A stretch of DNA of 63,605 nucleotides, the filler included, from Octopus bimaculoides (taxonomy: Eukaryota): assembly GCF_001194135.2 (NCBI RefSeq). It is 7 parts of 7 records of this genome, joined end to end, with 100 filler letters (N's around TTAATTAATTAA, not from the genome) between each part and the next. Parts side by side here need not be neighbours in the genome. Positions count along the whole stretch, not along the records: positions 27,196 to 43,974 come from NC_068984.1; 6 more parts are not named here. One strand, given 5' to 3'. Positions 9,690 through 43,926 of the stretch are shown one piece after another. Each line of letters opens with the position of its first letter. Positions within the stretch are counted from its first letter, which is position 1. Position numbers and translations under genes: made by a program. The notes under the pieces were generated by a model, which saw only the letters and a list, made by a program, of their open reading frames with translations, had not been told where the DNA came from and did not search any database.

Positions 9690-10640
9690 GTGTTGTCCAT
9701 ACATGGGTACGTATTCCGCAACCAGAGAGCTACAACAACATCAGCAGGAAGAGTAACTACTCCTGGAACACTGTTAGATACATTACATCCCACCTAGAAG
9801 GATATACCTTTGCTATCCAGGAACAAGATACAGCTAGTAAATACCTGATAAACAAGAGTAATAAATATATTACCAAACCTCCACGTTGTGACAATAAATG
9901 TCGGTTCTGGTATACCAGGGCAGAACATACCACCCACATCATCATCAGCTGCCACGAAATGCGTACAAGATACCACCTGCCCATAAGACATGATATATTT
10001 GCGAATATTATTTACAATGCTATCCGAAGGAAAGATTGCTCTGACTTACACATCAAAGGCATATCAGAACCAATATGTATTCACACCTTTAAAAACAAGG
10101 AAAACTGGTGGAACACTATAATAAAAACAACAATTCTGTGCAAACACAAGAGAGCTGATATTGCTTTGTGGAATAAGGAACAGAGACCATGCACTGTTGT
10201 AAAGGTCAGTTGCCCAGCAGATGTGAATGCACAACATTCACGTTGAGTTAATGCTTAATTTATAACTCTTGCACCTTGACTTTGAATTTTCATTTTTACT
10301 TGTCACCATAGGTGCATTATGTCATATACCAACAAATTTACACTATAACCTACAAATACTTTGTCTTTTGAAGAAAAAGAAAAAGAAATTTAAACGGATT
10401 GTCTAAATCCATTTTATTAGTGACAGAGCGAATATTTGTAAGACATTCCAAAGATTCTCCACCTGAGATTCCTTAGGTGAATACATGGACACACTTGGGT
10501 GTATGCACCTACAACTTAACCGGCAAACCAACTCAACTGCATATATAGAAACACTGTGAGCTCCCTTAACTGAAAGAGTTTTATCGGTGGCTTTGTTAGC
10601 GAGCGGTTTGAACACTTTAAGAACATAAACAAATGTCTAA
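9690..10640 (+). mobile_element. R4/Dong-like RLE retrotransposon 3' end, subfamily B-like, degraded
   Basis: IHGYV, ITSHLEGYTFAIQEQD, CRFW...THIIISC, YHLPIRHD, WWN...KRADIALWN...VKVSCPADVN. Related to 42603-43738. Confidence 0.8.

Positions 10641-28787: not shown

Positions 28788-28790
<3 letters not shown>
28601..28790 (-). mobile_element. Very short 5'-truncated subfamily A RLE element with (AAT)n tail
   Basis: Near-identical to 6478-6660 in reverse (QKIALLGTAHILRKTLLIQ* plus 3' UTR). (TTA)n on both sides on the + strand. Confidence 0.9.
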
Positions 28791-28827
<37 letters not shown>

Positions 28828-28910
28828 TCAATTTTGGTTCTGTTTCTTGCCGAGTGTCTTCCCGACATCTAGGGCAAACACTCTCACTGTATACATTGGC
28901 CGGCCATTAA
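28791..28910 (-). mobile_element. 3' UTR plus (AAT)n tail of another retroposon, probably belonging to 29120-29965
   Basis: Minus strand ...gatgtcgggaagacactcggcaagaaacagaaccaaaattgaaataataat. The link to the 29120-29965 copy is inferred from position and orientation. Confidence 0.45.
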
Positions 28911-28949
28911 AATAAACACATCAGGTTCATCATTTAGAAAGTCAAGTTA

Positions 28950-28998
<49 letters not shown>

Positions 28999-29119
28999 GA
29001 GAAACGAGAAAAAGGAAAGAAAGAATAAAGGGCAAAAGGTAAAAATAGAAAACACATACACAAAAAGAAAAAAAATGAAGAAAGAAGACAAAGAAAAAAA
29101 AGGGAAAACAAGGAAAGAA

Positions 29120-29965
29120 ATTTCACAGCGTTAATGCTCTTCTCAATACGTGCAACGTACCAGTTAAGACAATCTTTTGCGTTTCTTGCTTGCATGGTGA
29201 GCAAAGCATCATACTCAAATAATTTTCAGTTCCTTGAATGATCATTCCAAGTGCTCCTACAGTCACTGGTATTGTAACCATGTTGAGAAACCACATTCTT
29301 TCGATTTCAATGGGCAACTCTTTATATTTTCTGAGCTTGTCAAATTCTGATATTATGATCACGAGGAATGCTCGTGTCAATCAATAAACTGACTTTATTG
29401 TTTTGGTCTTTCTCAACAACATCTGGCCTATTAGCTTTGATGGTTCTGTCTGTATGCACTGGAAAGTCCCAAAGAATCGTTACATTTTTCTCCATCAGTT
29501 ACAGCCTCAGGGTAGTGCTTCAATCATTTGTCAGCTGCGTTGATTTTATAATGCTGACATATTAACCAGTGTAGATATGGACCAACTCTGTCATATCTTG
29601 ATTTATACTCTATAGGTGCAAAAACTTTAGAGTCAGAGATTAGGTGTTTCAATCTCATCGTTGCGGTATCGGCACTTTGGGGTATACTCCATTTTTCATC
29701 ATAGTGACTTAGTAGTTCCGGGTTAGTAGGCTCTTGTCTTGAGCAGCTAAGATGAAGCATTCGTTCTCTACTTTAGCTCTGAGCTTCGTAGAAAATTGAT
29801 GATTGTGCTTCTGATCTACATCAGCGTTTTTGGAACGGCCACATATTTGCCATGCAGAGGTTTTTGCTCCCACATATCAGCCAATTGTATATACAGTTTT
29901 TTTTCTTAGCTATTGATATGACTTTCTTTGCAACAACAGTTGCTGCACTTCCATCGTGCTTTTCA
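29120..29965 (-). mobile_element. R4/Dong-like RLE retrotransposon fragment (third subfamily)
   Basis: WEQKPLHGKY...FILAAQDKSLLTRNY, RYDRVGPYLHW, and RLE C-terminus KLRKYKELPIEIERMW...IPVTVGALG...QKIVLTGTLHVLRRAL*. Confidence 0.8.
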
Positions 29966-29971
29966 ATAATG

Positions 29972-30031
<60 letters not shown>
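29966..30031. repeat. (TAA)n microsatellite between two head-to-head RLE fragments
   Basis: Directly visible. Confidence 0.95.
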
Positions 30032-30034
<3 letters not shown>

Positions 30035-31075
30035 TTTGTGGATAGAATCGAGAAACCGAAAATTCGTGGACAGAATGGTGGAACCGTATGGCATATTATC
30101 AGAAAATGTACGTCACTAGCCCAGAAAGAATATAAGAGACGTCACGACAATATAGCAACGATTGTCCATTGGACACTTTGCAACAAGTATGGACTTGACA
30201 GAGAAAATTAAGTGGTGCGAACATAAACCAGAAGACATCATAGACAATGATAATTGGACACTATGCAACAAGTATGGACTTGACAGAGCAAAAAAGTGGT
30301 CAGAACATAAACCCGAAAGCATCATCGAAAATGGTAATGCAAAATCCTATGGGATTCTATGATTCAGTGCGACCATGAGATAGAGAATAGGAAACCAAAC
30401 ATAGTGTTAATTCTTTTCTACACTCGGCACATGGCTCGAAAATTTGGAGAGGAGGTCAGTCGATTAGATCGACCACNNNNNNNNNNNNNNNNNNNNNNNN
30501 NNNNNNNNNNNNNNNNNNNNNNNNNNNNNNNNNNNNNNNNNNNNNNNNNNNNNNNNNNNNNNNNNNNNNNNNNNNNNNNNNNNNNNNNNNNNNNNNNNNN
30601 NNNNNNNNNNNNNNNNNNNNNNNNNNNNNNNNNNNNNNNNNNNNNNNTGCAACAAGTATGGACTTGACAGAGCAAAAAAGTGGTCAGAACATAAACCCGA
30701 AAGCATCATCGAAAATGGTAATGCAAAATCCTATGGGATTCTATGATTCAGTGCGACCATGAGATAGAGAATAGGAAACCAAACATAGTGTTAATTGAGA
30801 AAGAAGGCAAACGATGCTGGATCATAGATATAGCATGTCCAGATGACAACATGTTATGCGATATGGAAGAAAGAGAAGTCGATAGATTTGACAGGTTAGC
30901 TTGGGAGGTTAAGAAGTTGTGGTCGCTGAAAAAGGTGGTAGTAATACCAATAATTGTCGGAGCCCTGGGAACAGTGAGTAAAAATCTCGAGAAGTACATG
31001 GAACAAGTAGGAGCTGGAAAAAGGGTGGAGCACTTGCAGAAAACAGCACTGCTTGGAACCACTCGAATGCTCTGA
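30032..31075 (+). mobile_element. R4/Dong-like RLE retrotransposon fragment (fourth subfamily), mosaic and gapped
   Basis: TVWHIIRKCTSLAQKEYKRRHDNIATIVHW and RKPNIVLIEK...IIDIACP...IPIIVGALG...LQKTALLGT. It starts directly after the (TAA)n tract. Confidence 0.85.
30413..30476 (-). mobile_element. 3' end of an S2-type SINE, cut by a gap
   Basis: ctttctac...ggcaca.ggc.cgaaa.tttgg.gagg...gtcgatta is homologous to 50208-50260 and 53685-53738. Confidence 0.6.
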
Positions 31076-31303
31076 TGCAGATGGAATCAACATGAAGAAA
31101 ACGGCAAAAAGAGAGTACCAGGGCAAGTGAGAAAAATATTGGCTGCAAAGCCGAATGCCAGAAACATAATCTCGGCAATAAACTCGCGCGAAGTCGCAGC
31201 AGTTCGGTATGGTGCTGGAATTCTGAAGTGGACAGAGGAAGAGCTAAAGGAGATATACAGGAAGTCAAGAAAGCTCCCAACGATGCATGGAGCCCATCAT
31301 CCA
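31074..31303 (+). mobile_element. Post-RT (thumb) fragment of an RLE retrotransposon, out of normal order
   Basis: VRKILAAKPNARNIISAINSREVAAVRYGAGILKWTEEELKEIYRKSRKLPTMHGAHHP. In R4/Dong ORFs this lies upstream of the CCHC and RLE domains. Confidence 0.75.
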
Positions 31304-32842: not shown

Positions 32843-33547
32843 GTTGTTGTTGGCACTCCGTCGCTTACGACGTCGAGGGTTCCAGTTGATCCGATCAACG
32901 GGACAGCCTGCTCGTGAAATTAACGTGCAAGTGGCTGAGCACTCCACAGACACGTGTACCCTTAACGTAGTTCACGGGGAGATTCAGCGTGACACAGTGT
33001 GACAAGGCTGACCCTTTGAATTACGGGCACAACAGAAACAGGATGTAAGAGTGAGAGAAAGTTGTGGTGGAAGAGTACAGCAGGGTTCGCCACCATCCCC
33101 TGCCGGAGCCTCGTGGAGCTTTAGGTGTTTTCGCTCAATAAACACTCACAACGCCCGGTCTGGGAATGGAAACCGCGATCCTATGANNNNNNNNNNTTCC
33201 AGTTGATCCGATCAACGGGACAGCCTGCTCGTGAAATTAACGTGCAAGTGGCTGAGCACTCCACAGACACGTGTACCCTTAACGTAGTTCACGGGGAGAT
33301 TCAGCGTGACACAGTGTGACAAGGCTGACCCTTTGAATTACGGGCACAACAGAAACAGGATGTAAGAGTGAGAGAAAGTTGTGGTGGAAGAGTACAGCAG
33401 GGTTCGCCACCATCCCCTGCCGGAGCCTCGTGGAGCTTTAGGTGTTTTCGCTCAATAAACACTCACAACGCCCGGTCTGGGAATGGAAACCGCGATCCTA
33501 TGACCGCGAGTCCGCTGCCCCTAACCACTGGGCCATTGCGCCTCCAC
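32843..33547 (-). mobile_element. tRNA-derived SINE family S3 with target-site duplication (assembled with an internal duplicate)
   Basis: Head gtggaggcgcaatggcccagtggttagg (A box), ggtttccattcc (B-box-like), (AAC)n tail. TSD acaaa[a/c]ttattt at 32831-32842 and 33548-33559. Confidence 0.9.
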
Positions 33548-41915: not shown

Positions 41916-42602
41916 TATCAAGAGTGGTTTAGTATATGACGAAATCCCGCTTGTTGATGTGGGATCACCACCCCAAACTTTCAAAGTTTATTTCATGCCA
42001 TGCATCGCTTTGGTTAATTTGTCTGAGCGGCAGAGGCCCTAACATGGTCTGGTGCTGTTGTGAAAAGTTAAAGCTATTAAAATAAAACTTAAGAGTATAT
42101 TACCACTTTTCAGTTTTTAATGTTGCGTTTGCAATGTTATAAGTTACATGAACGCTTCTAGGACCATAAAATAGATTTTATTCCCAAATTATATTCATGA
42201 GTGTTAATATGTGTGGCGGTGCATGACAAATAATATATTGAATATCCATACGTTTTCGAAACCTATGCTTTTCTTTTGCAAGTGTTCTGAGACAAAATAA
42301 CCAGTCTGTTTAAGATAATAGAATATACATATATATATATATATANNNNNNNNNNNNNNNNNNNNNNNNNNNNNNNNNNNNNNNNNNNNNNNNNNNNNNN
42401 NNNNNNNNNNNNNNNNNNNNNNNNNNNNNNNNNNNNNNNNNNNNNNNNNNNNNNNNNNNNNNNNNNNNNNNNNNNNNNNNNNNNNNNNNNNNNNNNNNNN
42501 NNNNNNNNNNNNNNNNNNNNNNNNNNNNNNNNNNNNNNNNNNNNNNNNNNNNNNNNNNNNNNNNNNNNNNNNNNATGTATGTATGTATGTATGCATGTAT
42601 GT

Positions 42603-43738
42603 CATTGATCAGTTTTATTTCAAGATTTATTGCCAATAGAGAAAGAGCCGGTTTCTAAACTAGATTCAAGGCTCCTACATTGGAATTTCAATATATCAAC
42701 AACTGGGTAATATATTTGTATGTATGTATATGTGCAGATTTGTATATTTTGCTATATGTATGTATCCTGATGAATATAGTTACATATCTAGACATGCTCA
42801 TATATATTTAAATAATAAACTTCTGAAAAGTTTTACGGATTTTTACAGTTTCAGTGATGGATTAGATCTATGGTCTTCGAATTAGCTTTCTCCTGTCTGA
42901 TTTTGGGAAGCATAATTTCTCGAGATTGATATTTAGACAATGTGTTACATATCCCAGGGCCTCAATAATTACATGTATAAAACTGAACTCTCAGCGTAGA
43001 TATTCTCTTTTTCACTGATCTTCAGCTGTATATTAATAATTGCTGGGTTGCTAATTTCCACAATTGCACACAATGTCTCCGCTCTGTCCCAAATCATTCT
43101 ATCAGGTCTGTTGTGCTTTCATTTTATTGAGGTCTTCACTTGCACATTCCACCAGTATTCATTTTTATTATAAGTCTTCTACCATATCGTGGGTCCTTAT
43201 TTCTTTGTCTTCGGAATTATTGTTCCGACGGATTTCATTGTAGAATGGCCTAGCTATAACATCATATCGCATCGATAGATAATACTCTGATTACATTTTC
43301 AGACAACTACTTATGATGTGGGTGATATCTTCGGTGTTAACTCCAAAAAGTCTGCATCGGTTGTCTCATTTTACAGCTTTTCCTGCATTTCTATCGCTTT
43401 TGTGCATCAGGTACTTGGTTGATATTTCCTGTTCCTGGATTGCAAACGCATACCCTTTAAAGTGGGAGGTAGTAATCCGACCATTGATCCATGATAAACT
43501 GCTTTGATGATTGATGTTACTATCATCTCGGAGCTTTCTACTAACATATCCATGCATAGTCTTCTGCTCATATAGGCTCATCCTTTCATCTGATGATACG
43601 TTGCGGTAGAATCGTGCGACTTCTTTAGGCATGTATTGCATGTATTCTAGGTTATCAGACAAAGAATGTCGATCAAGGAGCGGCTTCCAAATTCTTATCA
43701 GTTTCAACTATGCAAACTTGGCCAAGCGATACACTTCG
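42603..43738 (-). mobile_element. R4/Dong-like RLE retrotransposon, subfamily B, 5'-truncated, embedded in (CATA)n
   Basis: TMHGYVSRK...SSLSW...SHFKGYAFAIQEQEISTKYL, EDITHIISSC, EYWWNV...HNRPDRMIWD...IVEIS, then a 3' UTR. (ATGT)n directly on both sides (42575-42602, 43741-43790). Confidence 0.85.
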
Positions 43739-43769
<31 letters not shown>

Positions 43770-43885
43770 TGTATGTATGTATGTATGTATGTGTGTGTGT
43801 ATGCATGCATTTGTGTATGTATATATATATGTATAAATGTATGCATATATGTATGAATATGTATATACATATATATATATATGTA

Positions 43886-43926
<41 letters not shown>

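What the first reader, a model, noticed from the sequence alone, without database searches (positions are those of the whole stretch)
42575..43790. RLE retrotransposon embedded in a (CATA)n microsatellite: possible new target specificity
Seen: a 5'-truncated R4/Dong-like copy (minus strand) is joined without spacer to (CATA)n at both its 5' junction (~43738) and its 3' end (~42603). Subfamily A copies in this window are tied to (TAA)n instead. The related copy at 9690-10640 also sits in CA/CATA-rich flanks, though less cleanly. Established: RLE non-LTR elements are often site-specific, and Dong targets TAA repeats. Inference: this lineage targets a tetranucleotide microsatellite. That would be a programmable-looking endonuclease/RT system of interest for R2-style gene insertion tools. 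I do not know whether it has been described.
Basis: partly seen in the sequence, partly recalled or inferred. Interest (0 to 1): 0.72.

Follow-up and report, generated by a model that had tools for sequence, protein, structure and literature searches.

The report
Retrotransposon lineage that targets (CATA)n microsatellites
A dead, 5'-truncated copy of an R2-type (restriction-like endonuclease) retrotransposon sits inside a (CATA)n microsatellite in an octopus genome, and its relatives in other animals are nearly always flanked by (CATA)n too (or by (CTTA)n in a sister group), so the lineage appears to insert into this repeat on purpose, much as the known element Dong does with (TAA)n.

Summary
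A 1,138-bp copy lies on the minus strand at 43739->42602. It holds the last ~296 codons of a ~1,140-codon ORF plus a 206-nt 3' UTR. It abuts (CATA)13 at its 5' truncation point and (CATA)~7 at its 3' end, with no spacer. The 3' repeat runs into an assembly gap.

The host is an octopus. The best protein hit is an O. bimaculoides protein at 72% identity. The copy is long dead, with about 12 stop codons and 2 frameshifts.

I examined 22 independent copies or families from other genomes and metagenomes.
- Nine have the same tetranucleotide repeat at both ends; with the window copy that makes ten.
- Ten more have it at the only readable end.
- Two have it only at the 3' end.
- One more distant family ends in (CA)n.

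The element's sense strand is always the CATA or CTTA strand. 5'-truncated copies broken at different points still abut the repeat, so it is a target and not only a tail.

A sister group 81-86% identical in protein uses (CTTA)n. More distant relatives use (CA)n or, like Dong, (TAA)n. All share a covarying 3' UTR hairpin, which the window copy retains.

Microsatellite-specific RLE elements are already known (Dong, Togen, some HERO). This is a new member of that kind, of moderate interest. I could not resolve its clade (R4/Dong versus HERO) or check whether Repbase already lists it.

The parts
43740..43792 (-). 5' flanking target microsatellite: (CATA)13 on the element's sense strand, seen as (TATG)13 on the + strand. 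It continues in degenerate form to about 43855.
42602..43739 (-). 5'-truncated, degenerate copy of an RLE-type non-LTR retrotransposon. It corresponds to about aa 844-1139 of intact relatives plus the 3' UTR. It has about 12 in-frame stops and 2 frameshifts.
43303..43356 (-). CCHC zinc-knuckle remnant (CRLFGVNTEDITHIISSC; the second Cys is mutated to Phe) that precedes the endonuclease domain.
   Evidence: (zf-RVT, weak)
42996..43157 (-). Restriction-like endonuclease core, in a shifted frame: YWWN 43157-43146, RPD 43109-43101, VEIS 43061-43050, EKENIY 43013-42996. This is the PD-(D/E)xK triad that aligns with the RLE of R2.
42808..42810 (-). ORF stop codon. The C-terminus ...TVKIRKTFQKFII* matches the C-termini of intact relatives.
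42602..42807 (-). 3' UTR (206 nt), ending ...gatcaatga directly before the microsatellite.
42647..42672 (-). Conserved 3' UTR hairpin: 3-bp outer helix, UU bulge, 6-bp stem, 5-nt loop, C bulge. The window copy keeps 7 of the 9 pairs.
42575..42601 (-). 3' flanking (CATA)~7, which is tail and/or the remaining target. It is cut off by the assembly gap 42346-42574.

Best explanation
The feature is an old, inactive, 5'-truncated insertion of a single-ORF non-LTR retrotransposon that carries a restriction-like endonuclease (RLE), as R2 does. Its lineage integrates specifically, and in one orientation, into (CATA)n microsatellites.

Shown here:
- The element's identity and boundaries.
- (CATA)n at both junctions of the window copy.
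- The same arrangement in many independent relatives.
- A conserved, covarying 3' UTR hairpin about 50-60 nt upstream of the repeat.
- An N-terminal three-helix domain without zinc fingers.
- CCHC and PD-(D/E)xK motifs that align with R2 proteins.

Inferred, from the established R2 paradigm of target-primed reverse transcription:
- The protein nicks the (TATG)n strand of the microsatellite.
- The freed 3' OH primes reverse transcription of the element RNA. That RNA is recognised through the 3' hairpin, and its read-through (CAUA)n tail can base-pair with the nicked strand.
- Incomplete cDNA synthesis gives 5' truncation.
- The rest of the microsatellite remains on both sides.
- Each new copy is again embedded in (CATA)n. 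It therefore makes tailed transcripts and offers a fresh target, which explains the tandem arrays.

A sister group switched to (CTTA)n, one base different per unit. More distant relatives use (CA)n and (TAA)n.
For: Identity.
- The best hit is O. bimaculoides XP_052833275 at 72% identity.
- Intact relatives of 1,134-1,197 aa have RVT_1 plus zf-RVT.
- They align with the solved R2 proteins 9nl3, 9dou and 8gh6, at E from 1e-31 to 1e-16, including the CCHC, KPD, D/E and K motifs.

Junctions in relatives carrying (CATA)n.
- L004: (CATA)50 lies directly 5' of a truncated copy, with 'catacatacat' at the 3' end.
- L007: an intact copy is preceded by (CATA)41.
- L008-L011: an intact copy is flanked on both sides, in 4 samples.
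- L012: a tandem array in which each copy is flanked.
- L025: an intact copy is flanked on both sides.
- L002, L003, L013, L023 and L033: (CATA)n at the 3' end.

Junctions in relatives carrying (CTTA)n.
- L005, L006, L014 and L022: both sides.
- L019 and L034: 5' end.
- L020, L021, L029 and L031: 3' end.

Other points.
- In these loci, nearly every ACAT- or ACTT-class microsatellite abuts an element end, always in the sense orientation.
- Truncation points differ between copies, and non-element DNA lies beyond the 5' repeat.
- Hairpin: 95.4% of cells paired, 9 of 9 pairs with compensatory changes, 0 of 500 shuffles as good, slid controls 22-44% paired. Single-sequence folds recover it.
- The background for (CATA)n in the piece is 0.5-0.9%.
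Against: - Only one octopus copy is informative. The second octopus copy (L001) is truncated at both ends and sits in a C2H2 zinc-finger gene array with no (CATA)n.
- The window's 3' repeat is only 27 nt long before an assembly gap.
- Two relatives (L003, L013) have the repeat only at the 3' end.
- In one genome, the (TTAC)n arrays upstream of two copies belong to the end of another repeat family. Some 5' repeats are therefore tails of other elements. That is still a microsatellite target, but it also fits template switching.
- No empty site, cleavage assay or retrotransposition assay exists.
- The loci were chosen through their proteins and are not a random genomic census.
Confidence: 0.85

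Rival explanations
1. Tail only. (CATA)n is just the element's own 3' tail, as in many LINEs with microsatellite tails. The 5' (CATA)n of the window copy would then be a chance flank in a very microsatellite-rich genome.
For: The piece is 8% perfect simple repeats. L003 and L013 carry the repeat only at the 3' end. The 3' repeat always starts in the same register after the UTR, as a templated tail would.
Against: ACAT-class repeats are under 1% of the piece. Ten copies, the window's included, have the same repeat at both ends, and four more have it at a 5' junction that is the only readable end. These include copies truncated at different codons, and all are in one orientation.
Confidence: 0.04
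2. Template-switch chimeras. The reverse transcriptase jumps from the element RNA to the (CAUA)n or (CUUA)n tail of another RNA. That RNA could be another copy or an unrelated tailed retroposon. The 5' repeat would then be the tail of a second template, not pre-existing target DNA, and insertion sites need not be microsatellites.
For: Tandem arrays of copies are separated by the repeat: L012, the L014 mini-copy, and the (TAA)n copies in the piece. The 260 bp upstream of the (TTAC)n in L006 and L014 are 82% identical, so they belong to another repeat family that ends in that microsatellite.
Against: Upstream flanks of L004, L005 and L007 match no other flank among the loci and lack the element's hairpin. 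Intact full-length copies are also preceded directly by the repeat. In L008, L012 and L005 the downstream repeat is followed by unique DNA. Tandem arrays are equally expected from repeated targeting of tails.
Confidence: 0.07
3. Passive accumulation. The element inserts without sequence preference, and copies survive preferentially in microsatellite-rich, low-recombination DNA.
For: This explanation was proposed for Drosophila Waldo-A/B near CA repeats (PMC3812793). The window region is dense in simple repeats.
Against: It does not explain spacer-free junctions, one specific repeat unit per subfamily, the fixed strand orientation, or the pattern in repeat-poor loci such as L004, L006 and L013, where the only tetranucleotide arrays are those at the element ends.
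Confidence: 0.03

Closest known systems
Dong (R4 clade; Bombyx, Anopheles, Biomphalaria), specific for (TAA)n
   Same: It is a single-ORF non-LTR element with a C-terminal CCHC plus restriction-like endonuclease. It inserts into a microsatellite, leaving the repeat on both sides. Here, (TAA)n-flanked relatives are retrieved by the same C-terminal profile and also occur in this piece.
   Different: The target unit is CATA (or CTTA), not TAA. The (TAA)n-associated copy in the same piece is only about 15-30% identical over the endonuclease region. Whether this lineage falls inside the R4/Dong clade was not testable.
HERO families reported as microsatellite-specific (Kapitonov & Jurka 2014, Repbase Reports, cited in PMC4640811) and Togen, specific for (TG)n (PMC4640811)
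   Same: These are RLE-type elements with microsatellite specificity. According to PMC10294476, R2-Hero and R4-Dong types occur among molluscs almost only in cephalopods.
   Different: The papers I could read name no (CATA)n target. NeSL and Utopia relatives carry N-terminal zinc fingers, which this lineage lacks (0 of 36 full-length proteins).
Waldo (R1 clade), specific for (ACAY)n
   Same: It targets the same class of repeat, since ACAT equals CATA (PMC3812793).
   Different: Waldo uses an apurinic/apyrimidinic-type endonuclease at the N-terminus. The shared target is convergent.
R2 (28S rDNA-specific; solved structures 8gh6, 9dou, 9nl3)
   Same: The RT, CCHC and PD-(D/E)xK domains align. 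It has a single ORF, a structured 3' UTR presumably recognised by the protein, and uses target-primed reverse transcription.
   Different: R2 has N-terminal zinc fingers plus a Myb domain and targets one rDNA site. This lineage has a conserved three-helix N-terminal domain without zinc fingers and targets a simple repeat.
Stringent-type LINEs with a 3' stem-loop plus short tandem-repeat tail (e.g. eel UnaL2; from my own knowledge, Kajikawa & Okada 2002)
   Same: A conserved 3' hairpin is followed by a short-unit repeat tail, both likely needed to start reverse transcription.
   Different: Those are APE-type L2-clade elements and are not reported as microsatellite-specific.

Membership tests
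RLE-type non-LTR retrotransposons (R2 group in the Repbase sense) | Reverse transcriptase domain of non-LTR type | tested here: met
   Intact relatives hit RVT_1 at E from 1e-24 to 1e-27 and align with the R2 RT. The window copy itself is truncated downstream of the RT.
RLE-type non-LTR retrotransposons (R2 group in the Repbase sense) | C-terminal CCHC motif followed by a PD-(D/E)xK restriction-like endonuclease | tested here: met
   The window copy has CRLF..H....C at 43356-43303, then RPD, VEIS and EKENIY at 43109-42996. In relatives these motifs align with R2 KPD...D...EK..KY.
RLE-type non-LTR retrotransposons (R2 group in the Repbase sense) | No LTRs or TIRs, variable 5' truncation, defined 3' end | tested here: met
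   Copies are truncated at different codons yet share the same 3' UTR end.
Microsatellite-specific non-LTR retrotransposons | The same simple repeat abuts both junctions of independent copies, including 5'-truncated ones, in a fixed orientation | tested here: met
   Ten copies, the window's included, have the repeat on both sides. Ten more have it at the only readable end. Two have it at the 3' end only. All are in the sense orientation.
Microsatellite-specific non-LTR retrotransposons | Uninterrupted repeat at empty (pre-insertion) sites | not testable with these tools
   No orthologous or allelic empty sites were accessible.
Dong / R4 clade | Placement within the R4 clade in an RT phylogeny with reference elements (R4, Dong, Rex6) | not testable with these tools
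   No reference sequences for Dong, R4, Rex6 or HERO could be fetched. Only R2 proteins were available, via the PDB.
Dong / R4 clade | Target is (TAA)n (Dong) or 28S rDNA (R4) | tested here: not met
   The flanks are (CATA)n. (TAA)n flanks are seen only in a distinct group about 30% identical.
R2 clade proper | N-terminal zinc finger(s) plus Myb, and insertion in 28S rDNA | tested here: not met
   None of 36 full-length proteins has a C2H2/CCHC-like pattern in the first 430 aa. Pfam finds no N-terminal domain. The target is a microsatellite.
HERO clade | Placement in an RT phylogeny with HERO references | not testable with these tools
   No references were available. The literature says some HERO families are microsatellite-specific (PMC4640811).

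The most novel reading that the evidence does not exclude
Target choice in this lineage may be set largely by base-pairing between the element RNA's read-through microsatellite tail and the nicked target strand. The conserved 3' hairpin would serve only as the protein handle, and a protein DNA-binding domain would play little part. A copy that lands in a new repeat would then make transcripts with a new tail and pass on a new 'specificity'. That would explain the CATA->CTTA switch between proteins 81-86% identical, whose N-terminal domain shows no target-correlated change. Such a system could be re-aimed by editing a few nucleotides of RNA.
Probability: 0.25. Interest if true: 0.75.

Novelty: new member of a known kind. 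Interest (0 to 1): 0.5.

Why it matters
Site-specific RLE retrotransposons are the raw material for R2-style gene-insertion tools. They are also a model for how selfish elements find harmless landing sites. Four things matter here.
- This lineage is widespread: octopus, a probable cnidarian, and marine and other metagenomes. It includes intact ~1,140-aa ORFs.
- Its target is a 4-nt repeat.
- It has a natural one-base retargeting, from CATA to CTTA, between close relatives.
- It has a small, well-defined 3' RNA hairpin.

Together these make it possible to test what sets target choice in an RLE element that has no zinc fingers: the protein, or the RNA tail. For octopus genomics the result also explains one source of interrupted and expanded (CATA)n arrays. 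The window copy itself is dead and has no direct use.

Tried and rejected
- More octopus copies. Only one annotated protein (P0001/L001) exists in the protein collection, and that copy lacks both ends. The window's own ORFs are not in the collection. A BLAST of the 3' UTR against the piece and L001 found only microsatellite matches.
- Clade assignment. No Dong, R4, Rex6 or HERO reference sequences could be obtained. PMC2829327 is not held.
- Literature on an RLE element that targets (CATA)n/(ACAT)n. Nothing was found. Repbase cannot be searched.
- N-terminal domain. Pfam and a PDB profile search found nothing significant. An AlphaFold model (pLDDT 80) gives three helices. The best Foldseek match is a homeodomain at E=1.2, which is inconclusive.
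- Exact-pattern scan of metagenome contigs with the hairpin sequence: 0 hits. The protein-profile scan succeeded instead.
- Rfam. Only sub-threshold mir-297/mir-466-type hits on the TATG repeats, which are spurious. No known RNA family matches the 3' UTR.
- Idea that the (CATA)-rich stretches inside the 3' UTR (42718-42775) mark the true 3' end. Rejected, because the conserved hairpin and the terminal motif lie downstream of them.
- A short similarity between the 3' flanks of L004 and L013 was not significant by BLAST.
Full report
WHAT IS IN THE WINDOW

The finding's region lies in a very repeat-rich piece. Perfect simple repeats of 12 bp or more make up 8.1% of the non-N bases.

Translating the minus strand of 42575-43790 gives a recognisable but broken reading frame. 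The frame runs from '...HGYVSRKL...AIQEQEISTKYL' through a CCHC knuckle (CRLFGVNTEDITHIISSC, 43356-43303). It then passes, in a shifted frame, through YWWN...RPD...VEIS...EKENIY (43157-42996). It returns to the first frame for ...IIEALGYV...TVKIRKTFQKFII*, with the stop codon at 42810-42808. The copy has about 12 stops and two frameshifts.

Pfam gives only a weak zf-RVT hit. The best protein match is XP_052833275, 'uncharacterized protein LOC106878562' of Octopus bimaculoides, at 72% identity. The host is therefore an octopus.

Intact relatives are 1,134-1,197 aa long. The window copy matches only their last ~296 residues, so it is 5'-truncated downstream of the reverse transcriptase.

BOUNDARIES

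Nucleotide homology to the O. bimaculoides copy (L001, 80% identity) begins exactly at 43739. Upstream on the minus strand lies perfect (CATA)13 at 43740-43791. It then degenerates into other repeats up to the edge of the piece.

At the other end, the 206-nt 3' UTR stops at 42602 ('...gatcaatga'). It is followed at once by CATA CATG CATA CATA CATA CATA CAT (42601->42575) and then by 229 Ns.

There is one weakness. The 3' repeat is cut by an assembly gap, so its length and the true flank are unknown.

ACAT-class repeats cover 0.9% of the piece, or 0.46% without these two flanks. A single chance insertion into one is unlikely but possible. Two other (CATA)n arrays in the piece carry no insertion.

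IS (CATA)n A TARGET OR ONLY A TAIL?

One copy cannot answer this, and the only other octopus copy I could reach is uninformative. L001 lacks its 3' end, and its 5' end lies in a C2H2 zinc-finger gene array without (CATA)n. I therefore examined relatives.

Relatives flanked by (CATA)n (element on the + strand of each locus):
- L004: a copy truncated at about aa 830 is preceded directly by (CATA)50, with non-element DNA beyond. It ends '...tatgaaa|catacatacat'.
- L007: an intact 1,151-aa copy has its 5' UTR (GACACCG...) preceded by (CATA)41.
- L008-L011: the same intact 1,139-aa element in four samples has (TACA)n at the 5' end and (CATA)n at the 3' end. In L008 the repeat is followed by unique DNA.
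- L012: a distant relative (about 41% identity, 1,197 aa intact) sits in a tandem array in which each copy is bracketed by (CATA)n.
- L025: an intact 1,134-aa copy is flanked on both sides.
- L002, L003, L013, L023 and L033: (CATA)n at the 3' end.

Two of these, L003 and L013, have a readable 5' junction without the repeat.

Relatives flanked by (CTTA)n instead:
- L005 is truncated at the start of the RT. L006 is truncated at about aa 870. L014 is truncated within the RT and is followed by a second copy of about 100 bp. L022 is full length (1,148-aa ORF). All four have (CTTA)n on both sides.
- L019 and L034 have (CTTA)n at the 5' end.
- L020, L021, L029 and L031 have (CTTA)n at the 3' end.

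In every case the repeat is on the element's sense strand. In these loci, nearly all tetranucleotide arrays of these two classes sit at element ends.

Copies broken at different codons still abut the repeat, and unrelated DNA lies beyond it. The 5' repeat therefore cannot be part of the element or its tail. The simplest reading is insertion into a pre-existing microsatellite.

HOW THE FAMILIES RELATE

I built a neighbour-joining tree of the C-terminal ~260 aa, without bootstraps.
- The octopus copy falls inside the CATA group, at 42-47% identity to the others.
- The CTTA copies are nested next to the CATA copies L004 and L013, at 81-86% identity.
- L012 (CATA) and the L015-L017 family are more distant. 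The latter comes from a TARA ocean sample among others and ends in (CA)n.

The same C-terminal profile also retrieves a group about 30% identical that is flanked on both sides by (TAA)n (L037, L046, L051, L052 and others). That is Dong-like behaviour.

Such (TAA)n copies also occur in this very piece.
- A plus-strand copy at 30033-31075 is preceded directly by (TAA)22 at 29965-30032.
- A minus-strand copy (about 29471->29120, plus its UTR) ends at (TAA)12 at 28790-28827. That repeat is followed by another C-terminal fragment.

The picture is a large assemblage of RLE elements in which each sub-lineage is tied to one simple repeat.

The host of L004 and L013 is probably a cnidarian. The best named homologues of a neighbouring potassium-channel gene are from Nematostella, at 58% identity. 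The lineage is thus not confined to molluscs. This host assignment is an inference.

ANATOMY OF INTACT RELATIVES

Full-length elements are about 3.8-4.1 kb with a 5' UTR of about 220 nt. The start of that UTR is conserved: GACACCG......GGACGTG. They encode one ORF with these parts, in order:
- A conserved N-terminal domain of about 70 aa (R-N-R-D-Y..W..EL..DLY..Y...GYMKRLK.LWD..HP...LR.QA).
- A probable coiled-coil region.
- The RT, with an FVDD motif.
- The CCHC knuckle.
- The RLE.

None of 36 full-length proteins has a zinc-finger pattern in the first 430 aa.

The N-terminal domain models as three helices at mean pLDDT 80. The fold search was inconclusive: the best match is a homeodomain at E=1.2. 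A profile search of PDB sequences found nothing significant.

RT, CCHC and RLE align with solved R2 proteins (9nl3, 9dou, 9nl2, 8gh6, 8ibw) at E from 1e-31 to 1e-15. The catalytic KPD / D(E) / K positions are in register.

A CONSERVED RNA ELEMENT

All 3' UTRs, including the window's, share a block 50-60 nt upstream of the repeat. Its form is NCC-UU-[6-bp stem]-U(K)GUU loop-[stem]-C-GGN.

On a gap-free alignment of 12 sequences (A2), the 9 proposed pairs behave as follows:
- They are formed in 95.4% of cells.
- All 9 show compensatory double changes.
- None of 500 column shuffles reaches the observed pairing or covariation.
- Sliding the partners by 1-3 columns drops pairing to 22-44%.

I derived the structure by eye from these same sequences, which inflates the contrast with the slid versions. 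Even so, single-sequence folding recovers the hairpin independently in each of five elements.

The unpaired U5, U6 and C24 and the loop U16 are invariant, as expected of a protein-contact site. The window copy keeps 7 of the 9 pairs (block 42673-42645). This confirms that its 3' UTR really extends to 42602. No Rfam family matches.

MECHANISM

Shown: everything described above.

Inferred, from the well-studied R2 paradigm:
- The protein nicks the (TATG)n strand.
- The 3' OH primes cDNA synthesis on element RNA that is bound through the hairpin.
- The read-through (CAUA)n tail can pair with the primer.
- Abortive synthesis gives 5' truncation.
- 5' junctions mostly fall just after a complete CWTA unit. 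This hints at a fixed position for second-strand cleavage, though microhomology could give the same pattern.

The N-terminal domains of CATA-type and CTTA-type elements are very similar and show no target-correlated difference. The determinant of specificity is therefore open. It could be subtle protein changes or the RNA tail. That is the most novel reading not excluded. I give it about 25%.

RIVALS

- Tail plus chance flank is contradicted by the junction counts.
- Passive accumulation does not explain spacer-free junctions, one repeat unit per subfamily, or the fixed orientation.
- The one rival that is hard to exclude is template switching onto other tailed RNAs. In one genome the 260 bp upstream of the (TTAC)n in L006 and L014 are 82% identical, so they come from another repeat family that ends in that microsatellite. 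Tandem arrays are also common. However, other upstream flanks match nothing, and intact copies are also preceded by the repeat. Empty sites would decide the matter.

COMPARISON WITH WHAT IS KNOWN

Microsatellite-specific non-LTR elements are established.
- Among RLE types: Dong for (TAA)n, Togen for (TG)n, and some HERO families.
- Among APE types: Waldo for (ACAY)n, Mino for (AC)n, Kibi for (TC)n and Koshi for (TTC)n.
(PMC3812793; PMC4640811.)

Among molluscs, R2-Hero and R4-Dong types are reported almost only in cephalopods (PMC10294476).

I found no open paper that describes an RLE element specific for (CATA)n or (CTTA)n. Repbase and its Reports could not be searched, and no reference sequences were available for a clade test.

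I therefore file this as a new member of a known kind. It works like Dong. Membership in the Dong/R4 clade is untested, and Dong's own target criterion is not met.

VERDICT

- The window copy is a fossil.
- Interest is moderate (0.5). The result is not surprising in kind. It does offer a widespread, compact, zinc-finger-less RLE lineage with a natural one-base retargeting and a defined RNA handle.

Noticed in passing
window 28790-29471 (-) and 29965-31075 (+): A second, distinct RLE retrotransposon family in the same piece is tied to (TAA)n, as Dong is. A plus-strand 5'-truncated copy is preceded directly by (TAA)22. A minus-strand copy ends at (TAA)12, which is followed by yet another C-terminal fragment, so the copies form a tandem array. 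This family is only about 15-30% identical to the CATA element in the endonuclease region.
   Followed up: partly
window 31091-31303 (+): Right after the C-terminus of the (TAA)n-type copy comes a fragment that matches the post-RT 'thumb' region (about aa 715-785) of these elements. This out-of-order juxtaposition could be a second truncated copy or a rearrangement.
   Followed up: no
window 30240-30410 vs 30648-30797, flanking the N gap 30477-30647: About 150 bp are duplicated on both sides of an assembly gap. This is probably an assembly artefact and not biology.
   Followed up: no
window 32880-33503: A 317-bp unit is present twice at 100% identity, with a 10-N gap (33187-33196) inside. It is either a likely assembly artefact or a very recent tandem duplication.
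   Followed up: no
L001 9710-10837 (O. bimaculoides CM046628.1): The annotated gene LOC106878562 ('uncharacterized protein') is a fragment of this retrotransposon. The open frame runs on upstream into a C2H2 zinc-finger array, so the gene model is a retrotransposon remnant inside a ZNF cluster.
   Followed up: partly
L006 9549-9809 and L014 5624-5884: The 260 bp upstream of the (TTAC)n target arrays are 82% identical between two loci of one sample. In that genome the targeted microsatellite is the end of another repeat family, possibly a tailed retroposon.
   Followed up: partly
L004 11072-11140 and L013 8491-8560: The 3' flanks beyond the (CATA)n share short similar strings (ttatttgat[a/t]acgcaggt ... 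gcagatgtggacc). BLAST does not find this significant. It could be chance, 3' transduction or a shared target repeat.
   Followed up: partly
L003 4136-5532: Downstream of the copy lie TTAGGG arrays interleaved with a 144-bp satellite, a subtelomere-like context.
   Followed up: no
L015-L017; L043; L058: More distant relatives end in other simple repeats: (CA)n in L015-L017 (a TARA ocean sample among them), (TAC)33 in L043, and (ACGATA)n in L058. This suggests many repeat-specific sub-lineages.
   Followed up: partly
window 43741-43888: The TATG/TGTA microsatellite gives sub-threshold Rfam hits to mir-297, mir-466 and mir-1277. These hits reflect the repeat composition and are not miRNA genes.
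   Followed up: yes
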